From assembly GCF_011386835.1 (NCBI RefSeq), contig NC_088815.1, forward strand, positions 14,942,001-15,006,000: a stretch of 64,000 bases of DNA, read 5' to 3'. A program made the position numbers and the translations under genes. Of the stretch, positions 1 to 23,997 are shown piece after piece. Every line of letters starts with the position of its first letter. The stretch's first letter is position 1. Source of the stretch: Chrysemys picta bellii (Eukaryota). A model generated the notes under the pieces. The model did no database searches, was not told the origin of the DNA, and was given only the letters and a program-made list of their open reading frames with translations.

Positions 1-181
1 AGCGAGCTGGCGGTAAATCTGGGAAAAGAACGCAGAGTCCTAACTCCCAGGCCTCTGCTCTGACCACTAAACAGCCACACAAAGAACTAAAAATTAAACC
101 TGCCGTTAAGCAGCATGACCTTGGGGTAGGAGAGCACAGAGGGCATGAGATAAGAACCAGCAGTCAAAGGGTTAATACTAC

Positions 182-752
182 CTTTGGCAGCCTCTATGAG
201 GATCCTTAAACCGTTGTTTTCTGATACAATCATCTTGGCGTGATCATGGGCCTGGCCAAAGGGCACACGAATGTCATCATCAAATGTCATGACCCTGAGC
301 GCTGAGGAGGCCTCTCGGACCACGCCAGCACAGTCACCATGCCGGACAATGGCACCCGTCAGCAATGGCAGGATGCCACCTTTCACCAGTTCCTGGCGGT
401 TCTGCTCATGTTTCAGACAGGCGTGTCGGATGCACCGGATCCCAGCTAGAGTCATTTCAGCGTCATCTGCGTTTTCCTTCAGCGTTCGCAGCAACAGCTC
501 TTGGCCAGCAGAGTCGAGCAGGTCTGGCTGCCCATCCATGAGGGCAGAAAAAGCATGCAGGGCCTTGAGCATGGCACTTCTGTCTCCTGAGGCCAGCTTG
601 CAGGCAGACAGCACCACAGGACAGGCACCTTTCTGCCCAGCCAAGTAGCGGACAGCCAGCTGTTCTCTGCATTGCTCACTGAAGCACATGAGCTGCTCAC
701 CGACCTCACTGAGTGCAGAGTCAGCAATGGATTTCCTGAGTGAGTCTAATGT
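182..752 (-). CDS. ARMC6: ARMC6 large coding exon (ARM repeats)
   Basis: Acceptor ttttccttccttag at 754-753, donor GTAGTA at 181; in frame with ORF 87..689. Confidence 0.95.
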
Positions 753-3700
753 CTAAGGAAGGAAAATGGGGGTTAGTGTTAAACCCAAAATCTCCTGAGA
801 AAAAAATCCACTGGATCATCACATCTGCATATTTATAACCGTTTCGCCCCTTAAATTTAAGCAAATTTGGCATGGTGAGAAACACTAGACAGCCCAAGAG
901 ATAGCCATTAGTCTTTAGGCACACAATGGGGTGAGGATGTAAAATACTAAATGGCTAACAGGTAAGCATTAATCTTACCGGTTAACCAACCCTAACCATT
1001 AACCCCTGGCCCAGCCCCAGCCGCCCCAATGGCCCCAGCCCCTTTCCCTTTAACCGACTAAATGATCATTTTAATAGTTTAAACGGTTAACTTTTTTAAT
1101 GGGTATTTACATCCCTACAATGGGGTCAGAGGTGGCCTAGCACTGCTCTTCCCCCTGCAGCATGCCTCACTCCTGAGCTGCAGGGACCACCTCTAGGGAC
1201 GAAAGGGGAATTCAGTCCTCATGGCCCATTCAGCTCTTGGCCTCTCTGCAGCGTTTGCCTGGAAAATGCCTCTTGGTGATTTTTGTAAAGTGGACGAACT
1301 TGCCCATTAGCAAGTGGACTGGATCCCACTAACTCATTTCACTCAGGCCAACAAACAGGCATCGGTAAATAAGAGCATAAGCGCTGCCATACTGAGTCCG
1401 AATATGGTCCATCTTGCCCAGTATCGCATCTTTGACAGTGGCCTGTACCAGAGCTTCAGGGGGAGTGTTTGGAACAGGGCAATTATGGAGCGATCCACCT
1501 GTTATCCTCGTCTGGCAGTCAGATGCGTAGGGTCTCCCCGAGCATGGGGCTGCGTCCCTCACCACTTTGGCTAATAGCCATTAATGGACCTATCCTCCAT
1601 AAATGTAACCAGTTCTTTTTTGAACCCCAGTTATACTCTGGCCACTACAACATCCATGGCAATGGGTTTCATTCACAACAATTTGTGTGTTGTGTGAAAA
1701 AGTATTTCCTCTTGTTTGTTTTAAACCTGCTGCCTACTAATTTCATTGGGCGAGCCCTGGTTTTTGTATTGTGAGAAAGGGCAAACACCACTTCTCTGCT
1801 CACTTTATTTATCACACTGTTCGTGAATTTATAGACCTCTACGCCCCCCCCCCCCCCGTCATCTCTTTTCTAAGATGAGCAACCCTAATCTTTTTAGTCT
1901 CTCCTCATATGGAAACCATTCCCTACCCTTGATCATCTTTGTTGCAATTCTCTGAACCTTTTCCAGTTCCACTATATCATTTTTGAGATAGGGAGACAAG
2001 AACTAGACACAATATTCCAGGTGTGGATGCACCATGGATTTAAACGGGACATTATGATACTTTGTCTTATTTTCTACCCTGTCCTAAGGTTTCTAACACA
2101 CTGTTAGCCTTTTTTGACCACTGCTGCGCACTGAGTGGAAGTTTTCAGAGAACTATCCATGGTGACTCCAAGATCTCCTTCTTGGGAAGCCACAGCTAGT
2201 TTAGAACCCATCATTGTAAATGTGCAGTTGGGATTATTTTTTCCCCCAAGTAGGTTACTTTGTATTTATCAATGTTGAATTTCATCTGCCATTGTGTTGC
2301 CCAGTCACCCAGTTTTGCAAGATCCCTCGGTAACCCCTCACAGTCTGCTTTGGATTTAACTATCTTGAATAGTCTGCAAACTTTGCCACTTCACGGTTCA
2401 CTCCCTTTCCCAAATCATTTATGAATACGTTGAACAACATAGATCCTTGAGGGACCCCACTGTTCACCTCTTGGCAAAGTTATATTCACTGCTGACCTAG
2501 GGCTAGACTGGAACCAAAGACGAGAGGGGAAAGGCTCCACATCATGTTACCAATCCTCAGACTAGCCAGTGATCCCATTTATGTTATTCATGCCCTTTTC
2601 AGAACATCTATGGAGGTTTCATGTCAGGCTGACCCTTCCTTCTGGCCAAGAGGGGGCTGCCTGAAAGCTACTCAAGGCACTCCTTGCTCCTGCTGGCCAG
2701 GAAATATTATTTTGCACTTACATAACACCTTCCACCTGAGGTGCTTCAAGAGCTAACCCGGTACATGAATATCTCCATTTGACGAGTGAGGAAGCGTTAA
2801 AGCACGGTGAGGTTAGCCCTTCCTCAGGGCGCATAGAGAGTCAGTGGCAGAGTTAGAAGTGGAAGCCAGAGCTCCTTACTCGAACCACTAGACCACACAG
2901 CTTGTTGAAAAGCTACAATTAACATTTCCTACCTGCAAAATGTCGTGTTTTTGCTCTTGGCCATTTTCAGAGGTGGGTTTCCGTGCAGCTTTTACAATAG
3001 TACTCAGATCAACACCTAAAAGGCAAGAGAGAAGTAAGGAGGCAGGTGTACAGGAACTCTGGTGAAAACTGTGAAGAACATTAGGCTTATGTCTTTTTAC
3101 TGAGGGTTAACAAACACAGGCATGGATTATTAGGATGTTTGTTACATCCTTTGGAAGGGATACAAAACCAGAGTCTTGGCCATTTGCAATCAGAAAATAC
3201 CTTTTTTTAAAAGTAAGGGGCAATTCAGGCTAAATTCCAACTTGGAAAAAGTTCATTCTGCCTCTCTAAATTCCCTCCTGCTGTTTCAGCTTGAGCAGTT
3301 TTTCCTACCATGACCACTCCTTAAAAATGGGGTGTTGTAAACAACTTTGCCTCCCACCTCAGAAGAGGTTGCATTTTAGAGGCAGGCAACTGACCCTTAC
3401 ATGCAGATTCTCTGAAGAGCTTTGGGATCTTGCAGACCGAAGTGCCATAGGAAAAAGAACAAAATGGTTTAGAGAAGTGCTTCCCTTTATTAGCAGCCAG
3501 TTTCCAGAAAGAACTGAGGACATATTTTGGGATTCTTTAACACCCATAACTGGCTTATATGAGAGCTAAGTTAGCATTTCTAACACATACCCAAAAGCTC
3601 AGCAGACCCCTGATTTTTAATGTGTTGAAAGCATTTTAATTACATATCTGTCATATCCTTATTGCTTCAGAGTGAGATGGATTTGCAATACCCTGAGATT

Positions 3701-3812
3701 CAAATTGCTGGACGGCTTCTTTCGCAGCCTCATCTGGATCCATTTCAAATTCTGTGATGTTTTCTTGCACCACATCATCAAATGTTTCCTGTGTGATCCG
3801 TTTGGATGCCAT
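182..3812 (-). CDS. ARMC6: Armadillo repeat-containing protein 6, 5' coding exons (gene continues past the left edge)
   Basis: Coding exons 3812-3692 ([41 protein letters not shown]), 3015-2933 ([27 protein letters not shown]) and 752-182 (TLDSLRK...DGQPDLLD...[14 protein letters not shown]...[15 protein letters not shown]...LIEAAK). All have GT-AG boundaries with consistent phases (1, 0, 1). The peptide matches ARMC6. Confidence 0.95.
932..1117. mobile_element. hAT-type MITE
   Basis: TIR TGAGGATGTAAA / TTTACATCCCTA; perfect 8-bp TSD CAATGGGG (924-931, 1118-1125). Confidence 0.8.
1368..2472 (-). mobile_element. CR1 LINE, 5'-truncated, degenerate
   Basis: Reverse complement carries ORF2 C-terminal remnants and the 3' end (...gatggacc...cagtatggc..cttatgctctt) shared with the copy at 15905-17762. 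Confidence 0.8.
2765..2900 (-). mobile_element. MIR/CORE-type SINE fossil
   Basis: CORE-like text (ccatttgac...gagtcagtggcagagttagaa...accactagaccacac). Confidence 0.5.
3692..3812 (-). CDS. ARMC6: ARMC6 first coding exon (exon starts at 3852, ATG at 3812)
   Basis: Acceptor ...gatgacag| at 3853; 40 codons +1 nt, then donor GTATTG at 3691. Confidence 0.92.
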
Positions 3813-3964
3813 TTTATTTGATTATTAAACAGGAACCGAATGGCTTCTTGACCTGTCATCAGGAAAGCACAGAATTAGACTTGCTCCAAAACATTATGAA
3901 GTTTTTGACAGCGAGAAACAAAAATGTTTCCTTTTGACAGATAGTAGGGTGAGCTCAGAACCCA

Positions 3965-4200
3965 GAATCAGGGAAGTGTAGGACTGGAAGGGATCTCAAG
4001 AGGTCATCTAGTACAATCCCCTGCACTTAAGGCAGGAATACATAATAACTAGACCATTCCTGACAGGTGTTTGTCTAACCTGTTCTTAAAAACATCCAAT
4101 AACAGAGATTCCACAACCTCTCTAGGCAATATGTCCCAGTGTTTCACTACCCTGACAGTTAGGAAGTTTTTCCTAATGTCCAGCCTAAACCTCCTGTGCT
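3965..4200 (-). mobile_element. CR1 3' end fragment
   Basis: ggactggaagggatctcaagaggtcatctag...gattccacaacctctctaggc, the reverse of the CR1 3' terminus. Confidence 0.8.
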
Positions 4201-4204
4201 GTGA

Positions 4205-4560
4205 TGAAGATGGCTAAGGAGACTGGGAATAGGATGTAGAGCCCATCACCTATATAGGTCTTCAATTCAAATCTGGCCCAAGTTGGTAATGACCAGAAGG
4301 TATTACCATCCGACACCAGTTCAGTGGCTGTGGTTGAAGGGAGTTTGAGGTTTTCATTCCAGTTCCCAGTGGAGTGGCACAAAGCAAACCATCATATTTG
4401 GTGCTAATTGAGGCCCCTTTGTTGGCAGTCTCAACGGAGGCCAAGTTTATTTATTGACCATGGAGACTGAACGCCCATCTCTGTTAGAGGGAGCTCTTCA
4501 TTCTCAAGAGCCAGGCATACCGTCAGAGAGGAGCATGGAGAAGCTTAATTTGCTGCTACC
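4205..4560 (+). mobile_element. LF-SINE-like ancient SINE
   Basis: Blocks ccagttcccagtgga, ctaattg...ttgttggcagtctca..gaggccaag and gaccatggagactgaac resemble the LF-SINE consensus as recalled; not aligned computationally. Confidence 0.6.
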
Positions 4561-4829
4561 TATTCTGCATCTATTGCCGAGATACACAGTGGTTCTCAAT
4601 CTGCAACCTGCCCTAATCTTCCTTCACCAGCCTACCAATCCTGATATCACCCCAACAATTCATGATTTGTTCTGTGTTTTTTTAAAAAGCCATCATCAAC
4701 TTGAAATCTAATTAATTAAAAAAATATTTAAAGCAGTTTTAGATTCACCATGGAGAAGTGACTACAATTCAGGACTGGGAACCAGGGCTCCCTAAACTCT
4801 ATTTCTATTTATATGATTTAGTTGGGAAT

Positions 4830-4925
4830 TGATGATTTAGATGGGAATTGGTCCTGGTTTGAGCAGGGGGTTGGACTAGATGACCTCCTGAGGTCCCTTC
4901 CAACCCTGAGATTCTATGATTCCCA
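4830..4925 (+). mobile_element. CR1 3' terminus
   Basis: gagcagggggttggactagatgacctcctgaggtcccttccaaccctgagattctatgattc. Confidence 0.85.
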
Positions 4926-6229
4926 CTCAGCTCCTGAATCCTCTTATCAGTTTCTGCAGTTTTACAACCACATATTCCCATTTTTTAAAACATATTTTCT
5001 CTCCTGTTGCTGTGTGAAAGCCTCACAAAAACAACCGGGGAAATGGACTATACCGAAAGAGATGACCCAGAAAGCACCACTAAAAGTTCAAGACAGAGAG
5101 AAAAAGATATATATTTCCTTTATCTCTTTTAGTTACACTGAACTTGGATGTAACACTGATGGATCAAATTCACACGAGTTAATTTTTTTTTAAGTTGACA
5201 CTGTCCATTTATAAGCATTTTAAAAAAAACTGAGGCAATGAAGTGACTTGATCAAAGCCAGAAAGTTTCTGTATGTGATACCTCTGATTCAGAACACAAG
5301 AGTGTCTTCTTTTTTTTTTTAATTAAAGTATTGTGGCAACATTTGTGTAGTTTACCATTCCATAAAATAATTTTTAAATTTGATTCAGACACAGAATCAG
5401 AAACAGAATTTGAGGGGCCCTGGTTCTCAGTCCTGTATTCTAGCCATTTCACCATGGCACCAGATCCCAGCAGTTACAACATTACATATTTTAAACATTA
5501 GCAGGGTAACATGTCTATCCTATTGATTGTAAGCTCTTTGGAGCAAGTACCAGGTTTTCCTCTGTTTTGTATAGTTTCCATTGCACCGTGGCACTCAATA
5601 GGTAAGAGTAATCTCCAAGGAGAAGCTGTGCTTTTATAAGTTATTATTTAAAATTCAGTTACAAAAAAAAAAAAATGCAAAGCCACAAGACTTGGAACAA
5701 GGGGTCTTTGTTCCTGACTACAGATGCGAAGGTTCATATGGCACTGAGGTCACTGCAGCCCTACCTGTTCACAGCTCTGAACAGAAACTGCTGAGTTAGG
5801 ACAATGGCAATTTTGCCAGGCTGTGCTGGTGAGCCAGTCACGGGAGAAAGAGCGGACTGCATGAAGATATGACACCGCATTCTGAGTACCTGCCTGGGCA
5901 GATATTTATATGATCGAAAAGCCATAAGGCAGATGCATCCACCAGGATGGTCAAGGAGAACTGGGATAAGCCAGTGCTTGGCCCCCCAGGACTGGTATTT
6001 CAGGCACTAACAGCAGGTACGCTCAGCTTTTATCCTTAGCTTAAAGATAAGCCTCTGTGCTAGGCTCCAGCTTCCCTACCTGGGTCTCCACAATCTATCG
6101 GGCCCTGTAGCTTGGGATGGATAGGAATGGGGTGTTCGCTAAAATGCCACTCAGCGGGTCGGTAATGAAGGGCAGCTCAAGCCTGGCACAGGAGAGGATG
6201 CCCCCCCCTTATTGCATGGCAGCTGGAGG

Positions 6230-7620
6230 AGAGGAGCCAGGCACGTGTGGCCCCGGGGGGAGATTGGAAAGAACGGGGGCCAGCCTAGGGGAGAGAGGGG
6301 CTGGCCAGGGCTGTGTGCGAGGCAAGCGGGGTACTGCTAGGGTACAACGCAAAGGGCGCTGGGTGGGGGTTTATGAGGGGCTGTGGCGCCCCCCTGGGGG
6401 AGGGGGCGATCCCCCATGGAGGGGGGGGGGAGGGAGCTACCCCGGGGCGGGGGGCGATCCCCCATGGACGGGGGACCACTGGACTGGGTCCTCTGGTGAA
6501 GCCCATCTCAATCCCTTCCCCCCTCACCTGTGGGCCTCGCTGCTCGCCGTAGCTAGGTTCCGCCCCGGTCAACAAAGAACGAGAGACGCTCTGAGAACGG
6601 GGCTACCGCACTGACCCACTTCGGCCGCCATACGCCCTCCGCAGCGCAGAGAACCTCACCACACCACGCTCTCCCCGGCCCCGCTCAGCTGGGCGCCACA
6701 AAGCTCAGAGTACGCATGCGCACCGCGGCCACCACTTCAGCGTGAAGAAACTCACCCCATCCCACACGGCCCAAAAAGATCACGGAGACTGCGGACTGCG
6801 CAGGCGTCCGAAAGGGATATCAGTGCGCGTGCGCCACACACTCACGCGCGTTCCTCCAGCGTTAACCCAGGTGGGTCCTGCGCACGCGCAGAACCGTCCT
6901 GCGCGTGCCTATTCTCTTCCGTGCTCAGCGAGCGCCTTACCCTCTGCAGCGCATGCGCGGTGCGCGACCGTTCTGCCAGGCCAGGCGCCCTGTGGAGAAA
7001 AGTCGCAACTTGGACGAGCTGATCGATAAATCGCTGCTGCCGGGCTTTGGCGAGCCGCCGTCTGCACCGCCCGGGGGTGAGAGGCTGCGCGAGCTCTTAG
7101 TTAGTCCCGTCACCTCAGCCGCCCGTGTTTGGGGAGTTTCCTGGGGGTTCAAATGTTCAATTTTTAAATAAAAAATGAAGTGACCCCCAACCCCCGAAAT
7201 GCGTGTCAGGGGAGGGGGAGTGACTGCGCATGCGTGCGTGGGGAGGGACGGGGGGGGCAATAATCAGGGCGCATGCGCGACGGGGGCCTGCGTCAGGTGA
7301 CGCGCAGAGGCGGCTGGGAGTTTGCTGTACCGCACCGAGCGCGAGCGGGAGGCTGGGCGCGTCCTGCCTGCGGGAGTGGGGCGAGGTGCGGGTGGGGCTT
7401 GCGGTGGAGAAACCTGCTGAGGGGGAATTGAGGAAACCCCCCTTTAGAGACGCGTGACCAGCCTTCCTCCCTCTGCCCCGCGAGAGTGGTGGCTGGAGGC
7501 CTCGCCCCGGCCGGCGGCGCTTGTGGGGGCTCGGGGACCGGGGCAGCCTCAGGGAGTTGTGGAGCGATCGGTGGGAAGCCACCCAGGGCTGCTTTGGAGG
7601 CACTTATCACTTTCCTCCAG
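6230..7620. promoter_or_regulatory. CpG-island bidirectional promoter shared by ARMC6 and SUGP2
   Basis: High GC and CpG density between two divergent genes. NRF1-type GCGCATGCGC-like palindromes at 6712, 6797, 6879, 6949, 7225 and 7269; YY1-like GCCGCCAT at 6624. Confidence 0.85.
6528..6700 (-). other. ARMC6: Probable non-coding first exon of ARMC6 (TSS approximate)
   Basis: Consensus donor CAG|GTGAGG on the minus strand at 6528/6527, inside the CpG island. Confidence 0.6.
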
Positions 7621-7712
7621 GCTAGCAGGTCAGTCTGTATTGACGTCCCTTCCTGTATGGGGCCTCACGTTCTGGTCGGCCACTTGTGCCCAAGGGGGAC
7701 AGAAACACCCCC

Positions 7713-7771
7713 CCACACACACACACACAGAAACACCCCCCCACATACACACACACACACACTGTTCTTAT
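7713..7771. repeat. (CA)n compound microsatellite
   Basis: Two CA runs separated by gaaacaccccccca. Confidence 0.85.
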
Positions 7772-7944
7772 GAAAATGCTGCCCAGCCCCTCTCTCAGTG
7801 GAACACGCCACTCTTCTGTGGCCCTGTAAATGCACCCGACTTAGCCCTGCCTTTACAAGAGGCAGCTTGCTCTCCCTTGTGCAAAGAAAGGCAGTGAATG
7901 TATTTCAGTCAGAGATTGAGCATTTTTCTTGCTACAGAGTGAAA

Positions 7945-8059
7945 ATGGCCTCGAGACGAATTACGCGGGAGACTTTTGATGCTGTGGTGCAAGATAAAGT
8001 TAAAAGGTATCGGATGGACCGAAATGATGCTATAGAAGAGACAATCCATCATTTTAAAG
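7945..8059 (+). CDS. SUGP2: SUGP2 first coding exon
   Basis: Acceptor at 7937, ATG at 7945, MASRRITRETFDAVVQDKVKRYRMDRNDAIEETIHHFK +1 nt, donor GTAAGG at 8060. Confidence 0.92.
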
Positions 8060-11000: not shown

Positions 11001-14000
11001 ATAACTTGCATTTCACATTTTCATAGTAGTCTTCAAATATAACTAGTCTTCACAACACCCTTTTGATGCATATAAGTAATTCTCATTTTGTATGAGAGTT
11101 AATTTGCCCAGACTACGTAGGTGGTCAGCGACAGATCCACAATTAGATTTTGCAGGGTCGTGGCTCCAGCCCCATGCTCAGTCCCTTAATCCACACTGCT
11201 TCTCATAATGACACTGTTCCAGACCTAAGAGATCGATCCTTGAAGTTTTTCCTGATTTTTTTTTTAAGCCTTAATTTTCCCTTTCTTAATTTCTACTTGC
11301 ATCTTTTTTGCTAATATTTTAAAAGATAGGAAAATGTAACTGTAAAACCACAAATATTGAAAGGCAGACAAAGAGGTAAATATAGTAGCTGAAGCTACTT
11401 TTGACTTAAGTTTCAAGTTGGACTAGATTCCTCTAAATAAAATGACTTCACACCAATCCCTGCAGTATCCCAGTAGACGCTTCTCACAAATTTATTACAT
11501 TGCTGTTTGTCATGGCCCTTTGTTTATGGTTATTCATAGAGCCCTGCCTGGATAAATCTGCATCCGATCCGCAATACACAAAAATGGTTCATGGCTATAA
11601 AGTGGATAACCGCAGATTTGCAGGGCTCTAGTTATTCAGCCAAATACTAGTTCATGAGACACTTCCTATCCAAGCAAACTTGAAATAATTTTGAGTGAGA
11701 TTCTGAGATGTTTTCTATCCAATTATGTGCTAAAATTTGATTATGTTGCAAACAATAGCTTTTCTGTTAATATAAAAAGTTATCTTATTAGTTCTCAAAA
11801 ATTTGTTCTTTACAATGCCAATTGCTGTTGATTTCATCATCATGGATGTGTTGTGAGACTTTCCTCAATATTTGCTCCGGTATTTGACTGGGAATTGAAA
11901 CTAGACTTACAGCTAGTAATTGTCATGCTATAAAACTAGTATAATTAATATGATCCTGGCATGTATCTCCCAACCCGACATTCTTTAATTATTGCATGAT
12001 CACTTCCCCCTTTTATTATGCTGATTACATCTAAAATGTCAGTCTACCGAGAATGGGCCTGTGTAGTGTGTTAACAATAGCCGGCTTACTCCTGGAATAT
12101 TGCTATAAAAATGGTTGGACATCTTTACATCCTGTTGACAAGAATAATACAATGACCATGTTTTTTTGTTGTTACAGTTCCACAGCGAGCTGATCGGAGA
12201 GTTGTAGAGACGATTGAAAAGCTAGTGAACAGTATTGTTACAGGTACTTTGTCAGCAAAAGAGAGAACTGCTCAAAAAAGCTGCCCTGAATATTGGTAGG
12301 TATTTTGGTGAAGTTAATTCCAAATATACAGTAGAACCTCAGAGTTATGAACACCTCGGGAATGGAGGTTGTTTGTAACTCTGAAATGTTCGTAATCCTG
12401 AACAAAACATTGTGGTGCTGCTTGCAAAAGTTTACTACTGAACATTGACTTAGTAAAGTTTCAAAGCTGTATTATGCAGAAGAAAAATGCTGCTTTCCCC
12501 CTTTTTTTATTAGTTTACATTTAACACAGTATTGTACTGTATTTGGTGGTGGTTTTTCTTTGTCCCTGCTGCTTCCTGATTGTGTACTTCCGGTTCCAAA
12601 TGATGTATGGTGTACCAGTCAGTTTGTAACTCTGGTGTTTGTAACTCTGAGGTTCTACCGTAGCATAATACTTCTTTGCCCTATTTAGTGTCTGATCCTG
12701 CTCCATTGAAGTCAGTGGCAACTTTGCCATTGATTTCAATGGACTTAAAATCAAGTCCATAGTGGATATTTCATGTTAAATATGTTATGTTAAAATTAAC
12801 CTTTTTAACATACTTGGAAAGTAAGTGATATCTGCCCAGGAGTCCTAATTCTTAATCACCTGCTTTGTCTAACAGACTAGACTCCTTTTGATCTATCAAT
12901 CCACATGCAGGAGGGCAAAAACAATTTGAGTAGAAAGCCATAAGATATTTAGGTATAATGAATGTATGTTTGTATTAATTATGTATTTAGTCCCATGCTC
13001 AATGTTTGAAAACAGAACTTGAGACACATAATTGCATAAGCATGGTATAGTCTTAATTTTTTTCAAGTAAATCTCATTTTGTTCTAACAGCAATTTGGGC
13101 GTGACATTTAAGTTGCAACTTGCATTAAACTGAGATTGAAAAGTTTTGTAATGCTCTATTAAAGCTTGTTAGTCCAGGTTAAAATCCTGTTATATGAAGT
13201 TGATTTAATTTCAGTAATTTAACATGAATATTGCTTTTGAAGATGAAGAGGGCTGAGGCCCTGATTCAGCATTGACCTCTATGTAAGCAGATCCTTGTGC
13301 CCCCACATGTGTCCCCATGGCTCCAGACAGGCACAGGGATGTGCTTGCGGGGAGCTCACTGCAGGGTTAGGGTCTAAATTACAGAAGGTTAGAAAAGACC
13401 TGAATTTAAATCCTGGTTTAGGTTTCATATGAGCAAAAATGAACTTGAATCATCCGAAGAAGTGAGGTTTTTACTCACGAAAGCTTATGCCCAAATAAAT
13501 CTGTTAGTCTTTAAGGTGCCACCAGACTCCTTGTTGTTTTTGTAGATACAGACTAACACGGCTACCCCCTGATACTTGACTCCAATCCAGTCAGTTTGTC
13601 CAGATCTTTAACAATGCCATTTTATTTTAAAGCGACACTGTCTAGTTGAAGGGTGTTCGAGAATTGGCTTCTGTAGTCACAAATTACAGCTAGAGAAAAT
13701 TATTTTTCTAAACTTTTCCAGTTCGTTCGCTTTGCAGTTTGGACAGCACTTCGGCACTGATTCTAGAAGTTACTTAAAACATATGGTTAACTTTAAGCAT
13801 GTGAATAGCCCTAATGTCAATGGGACTACTCATGCTTAAGTACTTTCCTAAATCCAGGAAGTATAGTTTGTGTATCGTTAATTAACTGTTGCTTCTGTAC
13901 AGGCATTCCGTTTCTTTTCTTGCTGAAAAGACCTTTTATAAACATCGTGTGAAGTAGAAGAAAACTTTTTTTTTAATCCGAGACATACTCTTTAAAGAGC

Positions 14001-17000
14001 ATTCTTTCTTAAAATGGAATTATTTTAAATTAGTCAACTTTGAAAAAATTAATAAATCAAGTTAGAATCCTAGAATATCAGGGTTGGAAGGGTGATAGCG
14101 CCCCTTTGAATATGATCCCCACAGTATAGCTGTTTCATTACTGGCAACTTGAGCTCTATCTTAAAGCAATCTGTGATTTTGCAGCTTGACACAACTTATC
14201 TTTGCTTACTGCTTAGGAAATGGAACTACTGCTTATCGGAGGAAAACCCATACCTGTAGGTTGTTTTTACCAGGATAGGGCATCCTATATACTATCAACT
14301 ACCATGATGTTCTTGAAATATCGAAGGTTGCTTTCAGTATATGTTTTCATTACACATGCTGCATGCATTTTTCTTTTCTAATGTAGGTTCTTGTCTGAGG
14401 AGGATAGTCTAGAATACAAATATTACAGACTGAAGTTATCAGAGATGCAAAGATTGACATCATCTACAAAGGAGGGAGGCAGAGAGGGGAAAACACCAGA
14501 AGAATCTGCAACCGAATCAGTGAGGGCAATGTTGTATGCGAGGAAAGTAGCAAGTATCAAGAAAAGGCTCTTTAAAAGAAAAAGACTTGGAATTTTTACA
14601 CAACATGGAGTTAGAGGCAGGAAAGTGAGAAAATCAACTATAGGGACACAGACTGTGCTTTCAGCTGGTACGATGCTGAAACGTCAAGACAAGCTCACCC
14701 AAGGTTCGGTTCAGTCAAAATCTTCCATATCAGAAATCAGCATGTCTGAGAAGAACTCATCATTGGACACAGCTGGATCCTCACAGCATGCCACCAGTCC
14801 AGAAGTTTCTCTGTCACTGGAAGAAGTGGCAGACACTGAGGATTTATTGGCATCCACTGGACAGTCCCAATCACTGTTGTCTCAATTTCCTGATGGTAGG
14901 TGAAGGTCTGAAATTAGATCTTAATTATTAGCTCTAGTAGTATGAGCAAGGCATTAGTTCAGATGTCAGTAAAATACTCTACTTGGTATAATTATTTACC
15001 ATGTCATAGTGTCTTGAGAGTTCAGTTACTTTAGATCCCATTGTTCTAGGCACTGTACAAACACACTGTTTTCTTACTTGCAGTGGATGCTAAAACAATG
15101 GAAACTGCTGAGAAGCTGGCCAAGTTTGTTGCTCAGGTCGGACCAGAAATTGAGCAGTTCAGCATAGATAATAGTGCAGATAACCCAGATCTTTGGTGAG
15201 TAACCTATATATCCATATGTGTAAATAGTCTAATAAGAGAAATTACAACACCAAGCTTTTAATATAGCATTACTGTTTGACATATAGATCTGTCTTTTGG
15301 CTATTGGTAGCATTAAATTACATAGATTTTTGTTTATCACTGTCTTTTGGTCCTTAAAGAAGATATAAATTGTAATGTTTAAATATTTTTAGGAATGTAG
15401 GATTTGGATTTGTTTTACCGAGTCAGATTATTTATCCATCTTGTTTAACTCAGCGATTCTCAAACTGGGGTCCGTGAGTCATGTCCAGGGCCACCAGTCC
15501 CGCTGATCAACTCCTCCTCCTCCCTCCTAGCACCTCCTGCACGCTGCTGAACAGCTGTTCCATGGCATGCAGGAGGTACTAGGGGGGAGGAGGGAGAAGC
15601 GTGCACAGGGCGCGCTCGGGGGTGGAGGTGGGGAGTGGATTGGGGGCTGGGGCTGAGTGGGAGTTGAGCAGCCCCGGGGAAAACTAGAAGCGGTCTTGGA
15701 GGTCCACAAAACATTTGAAATCAAAATAGGGGTCCTCGGGTTGCTAAAGTTTGAGAGCCGCTGATTTAACTTATTGACCACTAATGGAGACAATATCTGA
15801 AGCTTGAGAGGAGGCCAAAATCTCTCCAGAATGCACAGTTGTCGTGATAGATGGGAGATGTAATTTTTTTACATCCACAGCCAGTCATCCTGCACCCCAA
15901 AGCAATTCTTTGAGGGTGTCAACAAACATGGACAAGAGTGATCTAGTGGATACAGTGTGCTTGGACTTTCAGAAAGCCTTTGACAAGGACCCTCATCAAA
16001 GGCTCTTAAGCAAAGTAGTCAGTCAGCGGATAAGAGGGAAGTTCCTCTCACGGATCAGTAACTGGCTAAAGGGTAGGAAACAAAGGGTAGGAATGAATGG
16101 TCAGCATTCCCAGTGGAGAAAGGTAAATAGTGGGGTCCACCAAAGTTCTGTACTTGGGCTTATACTGTTCAACATATTCATAAATGTTCTGGAAAAAGGG
16201 GTAAATGGTGAGGTGGCATTGTTTGTAGATGATACAGAATTAATCAAGATAGTTAAGTCCAAAGCTCAGAGAGGTAGCCGTGTTAGTCTGGATCTGTAAA
16301 AAGCAACAAAGAATCCTGTGGCACCTTATAAACTAACAAATGTATTGGAACATAAGCTTTCGTGGGTGAATACCCACTTCGTCAGACGCATGTAATGGAA
16401 ATTTCCAGAGGCAGGTATAAATATGCAGGAAGAATCAGTCTAGAGATAACGAGGTTAGTTCAATCAGGGAGGGTGAGGTCCTCTGCTAGCAGGAGGAGAA
16501 ACTGCTTTTGTAGTTGGCTAGCCATTCACAGTCTTTGTTTAATCCTGAGCTGATGGTGTCAAATTTGCAAATGAACTGAAGCTCAGCAGTTTCTCTTTGA
16601 AGTCTGGTCCTGAAGTTTTTTTGCTGTAGGATGGCTACCTTTAAATCTGCTATTGTGTGTCCAGGGAGGTTGATGTGAACCTGTGGGTATTCACCCACGA
16701 AAGCTTATGCTCCAATACATTTGTTAGTCTATAAGGTGCCACGGGACTCTTTGTTGCTTTTTACAAGTCCAAAGCTGACTGTGAAGAGTTACCAAGGGAT
16801 CTCACAAAACTGGGTGATTGGGCAACAAAATGGCAGATGAAATTCAGTGTTGATAAATGCAAAGTAATGCACATTGGAAAACATTATCCCAACTATACAT
16901 ACAAAATGATTGGTTCTAAGTTAGCTATTAGCACTCAAAAAGTGATATTGGAGTAATTGTGGATAGTTGTCTGAAAACATTTGCTCAGTGTACAGTGGCA

Positions 17001-17499
17001 GTCCAAAAAGCTAGCAGAATGGTAGGAACCATTAGGAAAGGGATTGATAATAAGATGATAAATATCATAATGCTGCTATATAAATCCCTGGCATGCCCAC
17101 ACTTTGAATACTGCTTGCAGCTCTGGTCAACCCATCTCAAAAAAGATATATTAGAATTGGAAAAGATACAAAAGAGGACAACAAAAATGATCAGGGTATG
17201 GAACAGCTTCCGTAGGAGGAGAGATTAAAAAGAGTGGGACTGTTCAGCTTGTAAAAGAGATGACCAGGGTGGATATGACAGAGGTCTATAAGATCATGAA
17301 TGATGTGGAGAAAGTGAATAAGTATCCTTCACCCTTTCACGTAACACAAGAACCGGTGGGGGGGGAGGGTCACCCAATGAAATTAATAGGCAATAGTTTT
17401 AAAACAAACATACGGTAGTACTTCTTCACACAATGCACAGTCAACCTGTGGAACTCATTACCGTGGGATATTGTGATGGCCAAAAGTATAACAGGACTC

Positions 17500-17530
<31 letters not shown>

Positions 17531-20500
17531 CATGGAGGTTAGGTCCATCAATGGCTATTAGCCAAGATGGTCAGAGATGCAGCTCCATGCTTTGGGTCCC
17601 TAAACCTCAGACTGACAGAAGCTGGGACTAAACGACAGGATGGATTGCTTGATAAATTGCCCTGTTCTGTTCAGTTCCTCTGAAGCATCTGGCACGGGAA
17701 GACAGGATACGGGGCTAGATGGACCATTGTTCTGACCAATTATGGCCATTCTTATGTTCTGAACTCTTTTTAGGACTTTAAACACAATGGGTTAAATCTT
17801 CTGATGGTGTAAATTGGCACGGCTCTACTGCTTTCTATGGGCTGTGCCAGTTTGTGCCAAATCTTTTGTTGGTGTAATGCCATTTGTGTTTGTCTAATTG
17901 GACCAAGAGACATTTTTTTACATGTGGTTGGGAGTTCCTATAGTATTTCATAATAGTACAAAAGTACCAGTGTAATGACTACATCTAATCTTTTTTTACT
18001 AAATCCATTTTTAATATCTAACTTTATGGTAACTCATAGGAATTTTCTTTTAGTTGTTGAATTTAAATGCTTTTCAATGCAATTTGTTTCTGCAATGCTT
18101 CCAGGTTTCTGCAAGACCAAAACAGTTCTGCTTTCAAATTTTATCGAATGAAAGTCTATGAATTGTGCCCATCTATCAACTTTAGTGCTGTTTCAGAAAT
18201 AGCTGCATCTGGGGAAAGTGATAAACCTGAAGAAAGAAATTTGGATAATTTAGAAGAGGAGGAGGAGGAAGAAGAGGAGGAGGAGGACAATGAGGAGGAG
18301 GAGGAAGAAGCTGAACTTGAGAATATCTCCCAGACCTTGGAAGAAGTGGAAATGGAGCATGCAGAGGAGGGGGAAGAAGAGGTCTCAGCAGGTGGTGCTG
18401 AGGCGATCGCATCCAAAGAGATGCTGTCCAAAACAGGAGAAGAAACTTCAACAGGTGAAATGCAGCCAAGCTCAGCTTCTGATAGTACTACACCAAATCT
18501 GTCAACACAGGTGCCAGCTTCTGCTCCTGGTACCCCTTTCCCTCGCAAAAGAATCAGCAGCAAATCTCTGAAAGTTGGCATGATTCCTGCATCTAAGAGG
18601 GTCTGCCTCATAGAGGAACCAAAAGGTAAGTATCATTTCAAGGATGTTTTCTGGCCCTCGGCAAGAGTCCTTGAATTCCTATATATTTGTAGTTCTTGGT
18701 TTAATAAAGTGAATTAAAAAAATATGCACTTCAGATGTCTGTTTACTAGTAGCCATTGGCACATCCCAGTGAACAGGTGGATAGTCATTGCATTCTGGTG
18801 CAATAGTAAAACTTGCTTCTAACTTGTGTGTGTTGTAAGGTTGACTCAACAATGCTTGTATTCAGTGAGCATATGTAGCTATTGCATACCCACACACCTC
18901 TCTGCTGTTGATTAAACAAAGTGATAAAAAGGTGGGTTGGGAGGGATTTCCATCACTTGTTTCTAGTTTTGAGCAATGTCTCAAATCTGGCAATGACCGT
19001 ATTTAGAAAGTCAGATTAATACTTTCACGTTGTAAAATGTTCATAACAGTTAATCAGGAAGTATTTTGGTTTGATATTTGTATCTCAAAAGTTAAGTGGA
19101 ATTTGTCAAGTAGTTTGACGGTATGGCCATGTTATCTCTTTTGTGTTCTAAAAGAACACATTCTAACAGTTGAGTGATACTTATGTTGAAAACTGACTAC
19201 TGCACATGTTCACTAACTACTTTCATGAGTGTCTTACCACACATAAATAAAAATGGTCTATGAATAGATGACTCCATATGTGCTGTGGGAACAAGACACA
19301 ATGAACTGATTTATGTGCCAGTCTTAACTTGGCTTTCCACCAAAACATTTTCAAAGTCAGTGGAGCTGAAACAGATATGAAGTCCTTGGACTATTGACAA
19401 TCTCCCCAAAAAGTAAAGGTACAAAGAGTAGTTAGGTGCCTGATTCCCATTGGAGTTAATTGCCTAGCCCCCACTTGTGCTTTGAAAATCTTTGTTTTTT
19501 GTGCACTCTAACCTTAATGCCCTTGGTAGTAGTAGTATTAGATTAAGGCATTAAATGGGAGTCATGCATATGAAGATGTATTTTGCTAGTTCCATATTAA
19601 AATTGGTCATCTTTGTGATTGACTTTTGTCTTTGCTTTAATTCTCAGTTCATGAACCTGTCAGAATTGCTTATGACAGACCCCGAGGCCGCCCAGTTACA
19701 AAGAAGAAGAAGGTGAGGAAACTCTGTGTGTAATTTCACTCTATCTTGTGAAAACAGTTCTGTAAATGTCTGCCATTGATTTCATGGCAATCTGAACCTT
19801 AGGCCTGGATCCTGCAAGGAACAGTGCACTGTTTGAGAGTAGCCAACTTCCCTCCACTCCCAGGGCAGACAGTGGAAGGTGACAAAGCTCAACACCCCCA
19901 CAGGTTAGGGCCCTTATTGAAGAATTAAATCATTTGTTAATCTGGTAGCTTTCTCTTACCTCTTAGAATAATTTTGTAAGGATGATATAAATGTGTTCAA
20001 TTGGAGTTTTTGTAATAGTGAGTGGGTTAATGTTTCAAATTTTTCATCCTGCTTTTGTTATCAGAAAACAACTATTAAAAAAGAAAATAGTGTGCTCTAA
20101 CGCTTTCCTATTTTTGATAGTGTGATTAAACAAACCAATGACACAAAATAAAGGTAGTTTGTCAGGTACATTAGTGTAGTACTCTGTAAATTGGCTACAC
20201 AAACAGTTACTCTTCAGAAGACATTTTCCATCCAGATGAAGAAACCTGTCACTTAAACATATACTTTTAAATCTGTTTCTGTACATTCAGGAACTTGGAC
20301 ACACTCAATTTGCAGAAGGTTTCTGGTGAAGAGATCAAACTGGTGGCTGCTTTCTGTACCAAAAACTCTCCCCCTGCTTTCTCTCTCTGCAGAAACCAAA
20401 AGACTTAGACTTTTTACACAAGAAATTAACAGTTAAGAATGTGGGTTTCCAGATGCTTCAGAAGATGGGCTGGCAAGAAGGACGTGGTCTTGGTTCACAA

Positions 20501-23500: not shown

Positions 23501-23997
23501 AGAGATCTGGTGGTTTCTGTGCCATTTTGGATTTTAGAAACCATGCTACTTTGGGGTGCCATCATTTTGAATTGGGACCATGTGTGTCATGAATCAGGTG
23601 ATCAATCCAGAGGAGTCTGTGAAATTGATCTAGAGAACTACCTATATTTCCATTTATTCAGCAATATCACATGACCTTGGCTTTTTTCTGTTTCTGTCTG
23701 TGGGGAGGAAAAGCTATACACAGTTGGCCTGGCATATTAAGGGACACAGAAACTGAATTAGATCCTTACTCTGTAACTGTCTCTCTTTGAAACTATTGTT
23801 ATTTTACATCTCTTCTGCACTTTGTCAAATAATGTATTTTAATCAAATTGTGCTAACTATCCATTTTACTCCCTAGGGGTACTACCTCTGCAGGGGAGGG
23901 CTTGGGTGCTGCAGGGGAAGAAAATAAAGAAGATACATTTGATGTTTTCCGTCAAAGAATGATACAAATGTACAGGCAGAAAAGAGCAAGTAAATAG
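7945..23997 (+). CDS. SUGP2: SURP and G-patch domain-containing protein 2, complete CDS (1098 aa)
   Basis: Coding exons 7945-8059, 9190-10788, 12178-12295, 14387-14895, 15084-15195, 18105-18625, 19648-19712, 20393-20529, 23877-23997; 3297 nt, phases consistent. Two SURP modules (PQRADRRVVETIEKLV...EYKYYRLKL; KTMETAEKLAKFVAQVGPEIEQF...SAFKFYRMKV), a G-patch ([29 protein letters not shown]) and C-terminus DTFDVFRQRMIQMYRQKRASK. Confidence 0.96.
8232..8531. mobile_element. hAT-type MITE (300 bp)
   Basis: TIR C(A)GGGGTCGGCAACC / GGTTGCCTACCCCTG; perfect 8-bp TSD CTTTATAG. Confidence 0.9.
8545..8945 (+). mobile_element. Old CR1 3' fragment
   Basis: ORF2 C-terminal remnants and a tail ...ttagatgatcac...atgaatctacgaatc. 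Confidence 0.7.
9190..10788 (+). CDS. SUGP2: SUGP2 large internal exon (1599 nt)
   Basis: Inside ORF 9117..10820; conserved block FGIEIIKWAGFHTIK...LFGREYIENLKAWL; acceptor at 9189, donor GTAAGT at 10789. Confidence 0.95.
9375..9549 (+). repeat. 30-nt coding minisatellite in SUGP2, (DYGRPASRDR) x5 plus a partial unit
   Basis: Unit GACTATGGCCGCCCTGCCTCTCGGGACCGG; TAT codons at 9378, 9408, 9438, 9468, 9498 and 9528. Confidence 0.97.
11537..11630. mobile_element. Short hAT-type MITE (94 bp)
   Basis: Perfect TIR TAGAGCCCTGC / GCAGGGCTCTA; perfect 8-bp TSD GTTATTCA. Confidence 0.9.
12329..12660. mobile_element. Tc1/mariner (Tigger/pogo-like) MITE
   Basis: TIR CAGTAGAACCTCAGAGTTA / TAACTCTGAGGTTCTACCG; TA target duplication on both sides. 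Confidence 0.9.
13448..13570 (+). mobile_element. Penelope-like element terminal-repeat (pLTR) fragment
   Basis: Same text as the arms at 16267-16395 and 35640-35762 (gttagtct..aaggtgcc...ctccttgttg...gactaacacggctac). Confidence 0.75.
13450..13490 (+). ncRNA. Minimal hammerhead ribozyme variant (PLE-associated)
   Basis: TCAT-CCGAAGA-A-GTGAG/CTCAC-GAAA-GCTT-ATGC; the core has C in place of U4; stem III is reduced to the palindrome AAGCTT. Confidence 0.6.
15451..15763. mobile_element. hAT-type MITE
   Basis: TIR CAGCGATTCTCAAACT / AGTTTGAGAGCCGCTG; TSD GTTTAACT / ATTTAACT. Confidence 0.85.
16267..16764 (-). mobile_element. 5'-truncated Penelope-like retroelement with inverted pLTR
   Basis: The minus-strand ORF fragment HINLPGHTIADLKVAILQQKNFRTRLQRETAELQFICKFDTISSGLN resembles the GIY-YIG endonuclease C-terminus. 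The two ends are about 82-bp inverted copies. 12-bp TSD AAGTCCAAAGCT (16255-16266, 16765-16776). Confidence 0.88.
16350..16392 (-). ncRNA. Minimal hammerhead ribozyme (intact core)
   Basis: Reverse complement: GCGT-CTGACGA-A-GTGGG-tattca-CCCAC-GAAA-GCTT-ATGT. Confidence 0.75.
18253..18309 (+). repeat. GAG/GAA coding repeat, poly-Glu (E11-DN-E6) in SUGP2
   Basis: Read directly in ORF 18067..18717. Confidence 0.95.

What the first reader, a model, noticed from the sequence alone, without database searches (positions are those of the whole stretch)
3692..8059. Head-to-head ARMC6 and SUGP2 have homologous first coding exons: possible gene birth by inverted duplication around the shared promoter
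Seen: ARMC6 (3812-3692, minus) begins [38 protein letters not shown] and SUGP2 (7945-8059, plus) begins MASRRITRETFDAVVQDKVKRYRMDRNDAIEETIHHFK. They share 13 of the first 16 residues and 18/38 without gaps. Both ATGs sit in an aaaATG context in a second exon behind a non-coding first exon, and both exons end in a phase-1 intron. The rest of the two proteins (ARM repeats vs SURP/G-patch splicing factor) is unrelated. From memory, the human proteins keep the motif too (ARMC6 MVSKRIAQETFDAAV, SUGP2 [15 protein letters not shown]). Inference: an inverted duplication of the ARMC6 5' end gave SUGP2 its N-terminal exon and created the bidirectional promoter. Retention in two co-transcribed proteins suggests a shared interaction, localisation or degron module. 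I do not know of a description of this.
Basis: partly seen in the sequence, partly recalled or inferred. Interest (0 to 1): 0.88.

Follow-up and report, generated by a model that had tools for sequence, protein, structure and literature searches.

The report
SUGP2 first exon copied from ARMC6
In this turtle sequence two neighbouring genes that point away from each other begin with the same ancient 40-residue protein piece, because the tetrapod splicing gene SUGP2 took its first coding exon from a flipped copy of neighbour ARMC6's; this is a clean but not unprecedented case of building a gene from borrowed parts.

Summary
Window 3812-3692 (-) and 7945-8059 (+) encode ungapped peptides with 18/38 identities. 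The alignment score is 101 against 20±4 for shuffles, and a profile-profile comparison gives 98.6% probability, E 6e-16.

The shared piece is the Pfam family ARMC6_N (PF27652). Precomputed Pfam hits already list it on SUGP2, so the domain-level homology is in a database. No paper in the searched library describes it.

Direction is ARMC6 to SUGP2. ARMC6 carries the module in a choanoflagellate, a hemichordate and protists. SUGP2 turned up only in tetrapods, and its N-termini form one clade (100/100).

The copy is exon-precise. In frog and platypus both exons run 121 nt from ATG to a phase-1 donor. The genes lie head-to-head in turtle, crocodile, frog and platypus.

The claim that the duplication created the bidirectional promoter is not supported. 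In gar, bowfin and tarpon ARMC6 is already head-to-head with MAU2, about 1-2 kb away.

"Shared function" is doubtful. AlphaFold2 predicts the same two-helix hairpin for both, but the SUGP2 copy reversed its net charge (-8 to +2), lacks the following GVDL element, and decays in rodents, pikas and snakes.

Verdict: a real, ancient exon-shuffling event and a new example of a known kind.

The parts
3692..3852 (-). ARMC6 exon with the start codon (ATG at 3812). It encodes the two-helix ARMC6_N hairpin, residues 1-40 plus the first base of codon 41. The predicted acceptor lies 40 nt upstream of the ATG. The GT donor follows 3692, phase 1.
   Evidence: 93% identical to Caretta caretta ARMC6 P0366 residues 1-42; the same 121-nt exon and donor occur in crocodile, frog, platypus, gar, bowfin and tarpon
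2933..3015 (-). Next ARMC6 coding exon. It begins (G)VDLSTIVK, the third conserved element of ARMC6_N, which SUGP2 lacks.
   Evidence: AF2 places a beta-bridge between residues 4-5 and 42-43
180..752 (-). ARMC6 exon encoding the start of the ARM-repeat region, residues about 69-259. The rest of the gene lies beyond the left end of the window. Ends are approximate (tblastn).
   Evidence: 93% identity to P0366
6100..7700 (.). G+C-rich CpG-island-like interval between the two genes, the presumed shared divergent promoter region. GC fraction is 0.58-0.70.
   Evidence: transcription start sites were not determined
7273..7385 (+). Predicted SUGP2 exon 1, which is 5' UTR or the coding extension of a predicted isoform. 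The GT donor follows 7385. The start coordinate is approximate.
   Evidence: 73% identity over 44 aa to the N-terminal extension of Chelonia mydas isoform X2, P0190; the junction AG|A GTG AAA ATG reads R-V-K-M as in P0190
7938..8059 (+). SUGP2 exon with the start codon (ATG at 7945). It encodes the ARMC6_N-derived hairpin, 38 residues plus 1 base. The acceptor lies 7 nt upstream of the ATG. The GT donor follows 8059, phase 1. It is 6 nt shorter than the ancestral 121-nt form kept in frog and platypus.
   Evidence: identical to the exon of Chelonia mydas SUGP2 P0001/P0190, which carry PF27652
9190..10787 (+). Large SUGP2 exon 3. It holds a disordered N-terminal region with a 30-nt coding tandem repeat at 9376-9550, and the conserved central domain (FGIEIIKWAGFH...).
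12171..23994 (+). Remaining SUGP2 coding exons, about 12171-12296, 14388-14894, 15062-15196, 18106-18624, 19647-19712, 20390-20530 and 23878-23994. They carry SURP1, SURP2, an acidic tract and the G-patch.
   Evidence: (tblastn with P0190), for the domains

Best explanation
The first coding exon of SUGP2 is a DNA-level, inverted copy of the first coding exon of its neighbour ARMC6. The copy was made in the lineage leading to tetrapods. It kept the start codon and the phase-1 splice donor, and probably the 5'-UTR acceptor, so it could splice in frame onto a SUGP1-like body of two SURP domains and a G-patch, giving a chimeric gene. The copied piece is the first two helices of the ancient ARMC6_N module. 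AlphaFold2 predicts a confident helical hairpin for both copies. After the copy was made, the SUGP2 version changed quickly on its stem branch, mainly by reversing its charge from acidic to basic. It was then held under purifying selection in most tetrapods. Inference: in SUGP2 the hairpin now serves as a modified N-terminal protein- or nucleic-acid-contact module, not as a carrier of ARMC6's original interaction. The divergent promoter was most likely not invented by this event. ARMC6 is paired head-to-head with MAU2 in ray-finned fishes, and in tetrapods SUGP2 occupies that position.
For: Homology: alignment score 101 against 20±4 for shuffles. The two-peptide profile found 777 proteins at E<=1e-3. 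Among the 150 best hits, which are the only ones listed, the full-length proteins fall into ARM-repeat ARMC6 and SURP+G-patch SUGP2, plus one protist deubiquitinase. hhalign of 42 SUGP2 against 55 ARMC6 N-termini gives 98.6% probability, E 6e-16. Pfam ARMC6_N (PF27652) is precomputed on both families. Among SUGP2 proteins it is absent exactly from the N-truncated and degenerate ones.

Direction and age: ARMC6_N is present in Monosiga brevicollis, Saccoglossus and metagenomic protists. Every listed hit of the two SUGP2 family searches is a tetrapod: all 119 hits and the 120 best of 228. They include frogs, salamanders, caecilians, turtles, crocodilians, birds, squamates, a monotreme, marsupials and placentals. 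SUGP2 N-termini form one clade (100/100) on a long stem of 0.69 changes per site.

Exon precision: the ARMC6 exon is 121 nt with a phase-1 donor in turtle, crocodile, frog, platypus, gar, bowfin and tarpon. The SUGP2 exon is 121 nt and phase 1 in frog and platypus, 115 nt in turtle and 109 nt in crocodile. The similarity stops at the donor, and the next ARMC6 exon (GVDLSNI) has no counterpart in SUGP2, so a processed retrocopy is unlikely.

Geometry: the genes are head-to-head in turtle (window), crocodile, frog and platypus.

Expression: Logan contigs of 3.5-4.2 kb encode full-length proteins of 962-1091 aa that carry the motif at or near the N-terminus (P0240, P0243, P0186). These must be spliced transcripts.

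Selection: turtle-crocodile dN/dS is about 0.11 for the SUGP2 exon and 0.21 for the ARMC6 exon.

Structure: helices at 8-21/22 and 26-39 with pLDDT above 90 in both models.

Promoter: MAU2 (Cohesin_load) is head-to-head with ARMC6 in gar, bowfin and tarpon.

SUGP1 kinship of the body: the best solved relatives of the SURP2 and G-patch regions are SUGP1/SF4 chains.
Against: No similarity survives outside the coding exon. The extent of the original duplication, and whether it included the promoter, exon 1 or the intron, therefore cannot be read from the sequence. The attachment point of the SUGP2 clade within ARMC6 is unresolved, because only 41 columns are available. Absence of SUGP2 outside tetrapods rests on word-limited searches and on three ray-finned fishes. 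Coelacanth, lungfish, sharks and lampreys were not examined, so the event could be older than tetrapods, and the polarity of MAU2|ARMC6 against SUGP2|ARMC6 is not fixed by an outgroup. A simple staggered-break inversion does not reproduce the human gene order recalled from memory. No functional data exist for the hairpin in either protein, and it decays in rodents, pikas, snakes and Xenopus.
Confidence: 0.85

Rival explanations
1. The event was not a small local mirror duplication. It was part of a larger rearrangement of the MAU2-ARMC6-...-SUGP1 neighbourhood, an inversion or segmental duplication. That rearrangement separated MAU2 from ARMC6, duplicated a SUGP gene, and left a partial inverted ARMC6 5' end at a breakpoint, where it fused to one SUGP copy.
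For: Fishes have MAU2|ARMC6->SLC25A42, and tetrapods have SUGP2|ARMC6 (window). In human, SUGP2, ARMC6, SLC25A42, TM6SF2, SUGP1, MAU2 and GATAD2A all lie within one region of about 0.7 Mb on chromosome 19, with SUGP2 and SUGP1 about 280 kb apart (PMC12270618). SUGP1 is the closest solved relative of the SUGP2 domains.
Against: I could not fetch SUGP1 or MAU2 loci of any tetrapod or fish beyond 10 kb from ARMC6. When worked through by hand, the standard staggered-break inversion model places the chimeric copy next to MAU2, not next to ARMC6. At least two steps would therefore be needed.
Confidence: 0.4
2. ARMC6_N is an old mobile module that SUGP2 acquired from some other source, and its position next to ARMC6 is coincidental.
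For: The module has moved at least once elsewhere. A protist USP-type deubiquitinase carries it inside its catalytic domain (P0092 and four cluster members).
Against: Among the listed hits, vertebrate ARMC6 and SUGP2 are the only two host families in animals. The exons share length, start codon position and phase-1 donor, lie 4 kb apart in mirror orientation, and are adjacent in every tetrapod examined.
Confidence: 0.05
3. The resemblance is convergent or a chance match between two charged helical N-termini.
For: Both are short, helical and rich in charged residues.
Against: None of 20000 shuffles reaches the observed score. hhalign gives E 6e-16. One Pfam model hits both families. The conserved positions are the hydrophobic core and the RITxETFD start, not the charged surface.
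Confidence: 0.01
4. The SUGP2 first coding exon is a gene-model artefact: a decayed ARMC6 exon copy wrongly attached to SUGP2 by annotation pipelines.
For: Most supporting proteins are computational predictions, and an older Chelonia model (P0001) reads through the upstream intron.
Against: The open frame, the ATG and the phase-1 donor have been conserved since the frog-amniote split, with dN/dS of about 0.11. cDNA-sized Logan contigs encode full-length SUGP2 proteins that carry the motif at or near the N-terminus. The exon 2 to exon 3 junction in the window reads through in frame.
Confidence: 0.03

Closest known systems
Pfam PF27652, ARMC6_N (N-terminal domain of armadillo repeat-containing protein 6)
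   Same: Both window exons encode this module. Precomputed Pfam hits list it on ARMC6 from protists to mammals and on tetrapod SUGP2.
   Different: The SUGP2 version is only the exon-limited two-helix part. It lacks the QGVDLSNI element, has a basic instead of an acidic surface, and falls below the Pfam threshold in rodents, pikas and snakes. The family is not in the local Pfam copy, so the window peptides could not be scored directly.
Chimeric genes made by partial gene duplication or exon shuffling (for example Drosophila jingwei-type chimeras; phase-compatible exon shuffling; from general knowledge)
   Same: A complete exon with its splice signals, and in the same intron phase, was copied from a donor gene and joined to the body of another gene. 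The donor is older than the recipient.
   Different: Here the copy is a mirror image placed across the donor's own promoter region. The donor and the chimera are therefore divergently transcribed neighbours that begin with homologous exons. The event is old, at or before the tetrapod ancestor.
Head-to-head paralogue pairs on a shared bidirectional promoter (for example COL4A1/COL4A2 and histone pairs; from general knowledge)
   Same: Divergent orientation, a short CpG-rich interval, and homologous sequence on both sides.
   Different: Only one 121-nt exon is paralogous, and the rest of the two genes is unrelated. The divergent arrangement at ARMC6 seems to predate the duplication, with MAU2 as partner in fishes.
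SUGP1 (SF4), the paralogue of SUGP2
   Same: Tandem SURP domains plus a C-terminal G-patch. SUGP1 chains are the closest solved relatives of the SUGP2 domains.
   Different: According to bioRxiv 10.64898/2026.06.30.735655, SUGP1 has a ULM and works with DHX15. The same preprint reports SUGP2 as largely DHX15-independent, chromatin-associated and a splicing repressor. Whether SUGP1 lacks ARMC6_N was not tested here. No protein of SUGP1 size appeared among the full-length hits.

Membership tests
Pfam ARMC6_N (PF27652) | Significant match to the family model | tested here: met
   Indirect. The model is absent from the local Pfam copy. Precomputed hits list PF27652 on Chelonia mydas SUGP2 (P0001, P0190), whose exon is identical to window 7945-8058, and on sea-turtle ARMC6 (P0366), which is 93% identical to window 3812-3687. 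My own profile of the two peptides recovers both families.
Pfam ARMC6_N (PF27652) | Two-helix hairpin with a conserved hydrophobic core (I6, F11, V14/V15, F/Y22, M24, A29, F37) | tested here: met
   AF2 gives helices 8-21 and 26-39 for ARMC6 and 8-22 and 26-39 for SUGP2, with pLDDT above 90 across the hairpin. The core positions are shared.
Pfam ARMC6_N (PF27652) | Third conserved element QGVDLSNI pairing with the N-terminal RI strand | tested here: not met
   ARMC6 has it, in the next exon at 3015-2933, and the model shows a beta-bridge between residues 4-5 and 42-43. SUGP2 lacks it: its next exon reads AHSRSVSRP and the model shows no bridge. SUGP2 is therefore a partial member.
SUGP2 orthologue group | Two SURP modules, a C-terminal G-patch and the conserved central domain | tested here: met
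   tblastn of P0190 maps ten exons in the window at 84-100% identity. Pfam finds Surp and G-patch on orthologues.
ARMC6 orthologue group | ARMC6_N followed by ARM repeats, about 470 aa | tested here: inconclusive
   Only residues 1-259 lie in the window. They are 93% identical to Caretta ARMC6. The ARM-repeat C-terminus is off the window.
Exon shuffling by DNA-level partial duplication | Homology bounded by exon borders, with the same intron phase in donor and recipient | tested here: met
   Exons are 121 nt against 121 nt in frog and platypus. The donor is phase 1 in all species checked, and similarity ends at the donor.
Exon shuffling by DNA-level partial duplication | Donor family older than the recipient's use of the module | tested here: met
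   ARMC6_N is present in a choanoflagellate, a hemichordate and protists. SUGP2 appears only in tetrapods. Lobe-finned and cartilaginous fishes were not sampled.
Exon shuffling by DNA-level partial duplication | Residual non-coding homology of the duplicated arms | tested here: not met
   The inverted-repeat search finds only the coding exons themselves: 59 nt at 75% in frog and 58 nt at 78% in crocodile. This is expected after more than 300 million years and is not informative.
Bidirectional-promoter gene pair | Divergent transcription start sites within about 1 kb in a shared CpG island | not testable with these tools
   A CpG-rich interval at 6100-7700 lies between the genes. SUGP2 exon 1 is predicted at about 7273-7385. 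ARMC6 exon 1 and both start sites are unknown without transcript data.
RIIa / DPY-30-type dimerisation-docking hairpins (considered from memory as a look-alike) | Sequence or fold match to the family | tested here: not met
   No Pfam match at E<=10. Foldseek against the PDB gives nothing below E=1 for either model.

The most novel reading that the evidence does not exclude
The two mirror-image hairpins, one acidic (ARMC6, net -8) and one basic (SUGP2, net +2), may pair with each other, or the basic one may dock on ARMC6. They are presumably transcribed from one CpG-rich interval. If they do pair, the exon copy would have created a physical link between ARMC6, a protein of unknown function reported to bind dsRNA and to be a proteasome substrate, and a chromatin-associated splicing repressor. 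That link would help explain why SUGP2 works so differently from SUGP1.
Probability: 0.1. Interest if true: 0.75.

Novelty: new member of a known kind. Interest (0 to 1): 0.5.

Why it matters
This gives a dated, exon-precise example of how a vertebrate gene was assembled. A start-codon exon was copied in mirror image from the neighbour and joined to the body of a splicing factor. The neighbour's older divergent partner, MAU2, was displaced. The finding also points to an unstudied, confidently folded N-terminal hairpin as a candidate for the functional split between SUGP2 and SUGP1. A 2026 preprint reports SUGP2 as DHX15-independent, chromatin-bound and intron-repressing. Finally, it flags ARMC6_N as a portable module, since a protist deubiquitinase also carries it, in a protein whose function is still called unknown.

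Tried and rejected
Several searches gave nothing useful:
- The local Pfam scan of the two peptides gave only noise.
- The PDB sequence search with the two-peptide profile gave nothing below E 0.07.
- Foldseek of both AF2 models against the PDB gave nothing below E=1, as expected for a bare helical hairpin. The RIIa/DPY-30 idea is therefore unsupported.

Two steps failed to reach their target:
- The first alignment (A1) was made one base out of frame and was discarded.
- The third homologue search was meant to reach SUGP1 and any fish SUGP2. It listed only amniote SUGP2 among its 120 best of 228 hits. Absence of the module from SUGP1, and absence of SUGP2 from fishes, therefore remain untested directly.

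Locus look-ups had mixed results:
- Two look-ups found no record, probably because the proteins were not the longest isoform.
- The caecilian and Saccoglossus loci showed no neighbour within 10 kb.
- Naming ten short N-terminal fragments gave no shark or lobe-finned fish entry point.

Other negative or unresolved results:
- No extra or relic copies of the exon were found in the window or in the fish loci.
- No arm homology was found beyond the exons.
- The tree could not place the SUGP2 clade within ARMC6, having only 41 columns.
- A single staggered-break inversion, worked through by hand, does not give the observed arrangement.


Full report
**1. The observation**

Window 3812-3692 on the minus strand encodes 40 residues starting [13 protein letters not shown], plus one base before a GT. 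Window 7945-8059 on the plus strand encodes 38 residues starting MASRRITRETFDA, plus one base before a GT.

- The peptides align without gaps at 18/38 identities and 28/38 positives.
- The local alignment score is 101, against 20.1±4.2 for 20000 shuffles. The maximum shuffle score is 54 and the Gumbel p is about 1e-11.
- Codon positions 1 and 2 are more alike than position 3, as expected for an old protein-level constraint.

Both phase-1 junctions read through in frame into the next exon. The ARMC6 junction is 3692|3015 and continues GVDLSTIVK. The SUGP2 junction is 8059|9190 and continues AHSRSVSRP.

A polypyrimidine-AG acceptor lies 40 nt upstream of the ARMC6 ATG and 7 nt upstream of the SUGP2 ATG. 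A G+C-rich interval at about 6100-7700 separates the genes.

Mapping sea-turtle proteins onto the window gives three ARMC6 exons and ten SUGP2 coding exons, at 84-100% identity. The window therefore comes from a turtle related to the cheloniids but not identical to them.

**2. What the shared piece is**

A profile of the two peptides, run against 1.84 billion representative proteins, found 777 matches at E<=1e-3. Only the 150 best are listed.

Among these, the full-length proteins are of two kinds:
- ARM-repeat proteins named ARMC6, from Monosiga brevicollis, Saccoglossus kowalevskii, fishes and unnamed protists.
- SURP+G-patch proteins named SUGP2, from a turtle, a caecilian and frogs.

One further host turned up, a protist USP-type deubiquitinase with the module inserted in its catalytic domain (P0092).

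Family-wide searches showed that the precomputed Pfam column lists PF27652 on both ARMC6 and SUGP2. A locus table names this family ARMC6_N. Among SUGP2 proteins, PF27652 is missing exactly from those that are N-terminally truncated or have a degenerate N-terminus: murid and cricetid rodents, hystricognaths, pikas and a python. The Pfam hit therefore lies on this motif.

A profile-profile comparison of 42 SUGP2 and 55 ARMC6 N-termini gives 98.6% probability and E 6e-16 over 44 columns.

The domain-level homology is thus already captured by a recent Pfam family. That family is not in the local Pfam copy. No paper in the searched library contains 'PF27652' or 'ARMC6_N', or discusses the two genes together except in association and copy-number gene lists. 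A 2026 preprint on all human G-patch proteins describes SUGP2 only as tandem SURP plus G-patch.

**3. Direction and age**

ARMC6 carries the module from choanoflagellates and other protists to mammals, and it is the best conserved part of the protein. SUGP2 was found only in tetrapods. Every listed hit of the two SUGP2 family searches is a tetrapod: all 119 hits and the 120 best of 228. All three amphibian orders and all amniote groups are represented. Every intact N-terminus carries the motif.

In a tree of the 41 aligned positions, the SUGP2 peptides form one clade with 100/100 support. The clade sits on a long stem of 0.69 changes per site. Its attachment inside ARMC6 is unresolved.

The donor was therefore ARMC6, and the transfer happened once, at or before the tetrapod ancestor. 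Lobe-finned fishes, sharks and lampreys could not be sampled, so the lower bound on the age is open.

**4. How it was copied**

The ARMC6 exon runs 121 nt from the ATG to a phase-1 donor (...CAG/CAA G|GT) in turtle, crocodile, frog, platypus, gar, bowfin and tarpon. Saccoglossus has no intron there.

The SUGP2 exon is also 121 nt and phase 1 in the frog Spea (...CTT GAC G|GT) and in platypus. The platypus SUGP2 exon ends CAG TTT AAG TCT CAA G|GT, beside CAG TTT GAA TCC CAA G|GT in platypus ARMC6. Sauropsids have lost 6 nt (turtle, 115 nt), and the crocodile has lost a further 6 nt (109 nt).

The similarity ends at the donor. The next ARMC6 exon has no counterpart in SUGP2. This pattern fits a genomic copy of a whole exon with its splice signals, not a processed retrocopy.

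The copy is inverted and adjacent to its source. The two genes lie head-to-head in:
- the window, with 4.1 kb between the ATGs;
- Crocodylus porosus, 2.8 kb;
- Spea bombifrons, 3.4 kb;
- platypus, 8.9 kb.

In frog and crocodile the two exons are among the strongest inverted repeats of the interval. Nothing outside them is still alignable.

cDNA-sized contigs that encode full-length SUGP2 with the motif at or near the N-terminus show that the exon is used (P0240, P0243, P0186).

**5. The promoter claim**

In spotted gar, bowfin and tarpon, the gene head-to-head with ARMC6 is a 598-residue Cohesin_load/TPR protein, that is, MAU2. It lies 0.9-1.8 kb from the ARMC6 ATG, with the mitochondrial carrier SLC25A42 downstream. 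These fish loci contain no second copy of the exon.

ARMC6 therefore most likely had a divergent partner before SUGP2 existed, and tetrapods replaced MAU2 by SUGP2 at that position. The duplication probably did not create the bidirectional arrangement.

In human, SUGP2, ARMC6, SLC25A42, TM6SF2, SUGP1, MAU2 and GATAD2A all lie within one region of about 0.7 Mb (PMC12270618). SUGP1 chains are the closest solved relatives of the SUGP2 SURP2 and G-patch regions. A local rearrangement that also involved SUGP1 and MAU2 is therefore plausible.

I could not fetch those loci. A single staggered-break inversion, worked through by hand, does not reproduce the arrangement. Without an outgroup, the polarity is the more likely reading rather than a demonstrated fact.

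**6. What it does**

AlphaFold2 with family alignments predicts the same hairpin for both proteins. The helices are at 8-21/22 and 26-39, and pLDDT is above 90 across them. Disorder follows the hairpin.

In ARMC6 a small beta-bridge joins residues 4-5 to residues 42-43. The latter belong to the GVDL element encoded by the next exon. SUGP2 lacks this closure.

The hydrophobic core and the RITxETFD start are shared. The surface is not. The first 38 residues carry net charge -7 to -9 in six ARMC6 orthologues and +1 to +3 in the non-placental SUGP2 orthologues. Placental values are -1 to +1. The switch lies at positions 18-26: [11 protein letters not shown] in ARMC6 becomes QDKVKRYRMDR in SUGP2.

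Since the switch, the exon has been under purifying selection in sauropsids. Turtle-crocodile dN/dS is about 0.11, against 0.21 for the ARMC6 exon. It has nevertheless decayed in rodents, pikas, snakes and Xenopus.

This pattern of a burst, then constraint, then lineage-specific loss fits a modified function better than retention of ARMC6's own interaction.

Neither hairpin has been studied. Published work calls the function of ARMC6 unknown. It reports ARMC6 as a proteasome substrate (PMC11374303) and reports its ARM region as a dsRNA binder (PMC11312991). SUGP2 is reported as chromatin-associated, hnRNP-associated and largely DHX15-independent.

My best guess is that the basic hairpin is a contact module for protein or nucleic acid that contributes to this divergence from SUGP1. 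This is an inference only.

Foldseek found no significant structural relative for either model.

**7. Verdict**

Creation of the bidirectional promoter does not hold on present evidence, and a shared function is doubtful.

The module is already a Pfam family that hits both proteins. The evolutionary event itself appears undescribed in the literature I could search.

It is a new, unusually clean member of a known kind: a chimeric gene made by partial duplication or exon shuffling. It is of moderate interest.

Noticed in passing
P0092 (with cluster members P0154-P0157; metagenome contigs, not in the window): A protist USP/UCH deubiquitinase, encoded as one continuous ORF of about 790 aa, carries an ARMC6_N module. 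The module spans residues about 202-253, includes the VDLGNI element, and is 54-67% identical to ARMC6 N-termini. It sits inside a glycine-rich loop of the catalytic domain. This is a third, independent host of the module.
   Followed up: partly
window 9376-9550 (+): A 30-nt tandem repeat, 5.8 copies at 95% match, lies inside SUGP2 exon 3. It encodes repeated YGRPASRDRD units, so it is a coding minisatellite in the disordered N-terminal region.
   Followed up: partly
window 45812-50742 (+): Exons of a class-4-like semaphorin (Sema domain, Ig, Sema4F_C-like tail with a transmembrane stretch) lie downstream of SUGP2 on the same strand. Platypus has the same neighbour (L007 31013-34517). A Falco SUGP2 gene model (P0229) carries a Sema domain, which looks like a read-through model.
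   Followed up: partly
window 15844-16299 (+); also 1859-1999 (-) and 2360-2467 (-): Reverse-transcriptase fragments lie in a SUGP2 intron (Pfam RVT_1, E 5e-10). Similar-looking ORF fragments lie in the ARMC6 intron and are probably decayed LINE/CR1 copies.
   Followed up: partly
window 3965-4024 / 4863-4922 and 4748-4815 / 5390-5457: Two pairs of inverted repeats, 60-68 nt long and 78-80% complementary, lie in the presumed ARMC6 5'-UTR intron. They are probably copies of an interspersed repeat and have nothing to do with the exon duplication.
   Followed up: no
window 7699-7762 and 6396-6454: A (CA)n microsatellite embedded in a duplicated 28-nt unit lies in SUGP2 intron 1. A duplicated G-rich 28-nt unit lies inside the CpG-rich interval.
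   Followed up: no
SUGP2 orthologues P0231, P0234, P0237, P0242 (rodents), P0232, P0238 (pikas), P0261 (python), P0162 (Xenopus): The borrowed hairpin is decaying in several lineages. The changes include Phe11 to Leu, a deletion in the loop and loss of the Pfam hit. Monotreme, marsupial, bird, turtle and most amphibian sequences keep it well.
   Followed up: partly
L003 10001-10150 (Saccoglossus) compared with L001, L002, L004, L005, L006, L007: The phase-1 intron after ...QFESQ|G in ARMC6 is present in every bony vertebrate checked. It is absent in the hemichordate, where the exon continues into GIDLSNII.
   Followed up: partly
window 18106-18624 (+): The SUGP2 exon after SURP2 contains a long, almost pure Glu/Asp tract (EEEEEEEEEEEEDNEEEEEE...). 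This is a possible intramolecular partner for the basic N-terminal hairpin. The idea is pure speculation.
   Followed up: no
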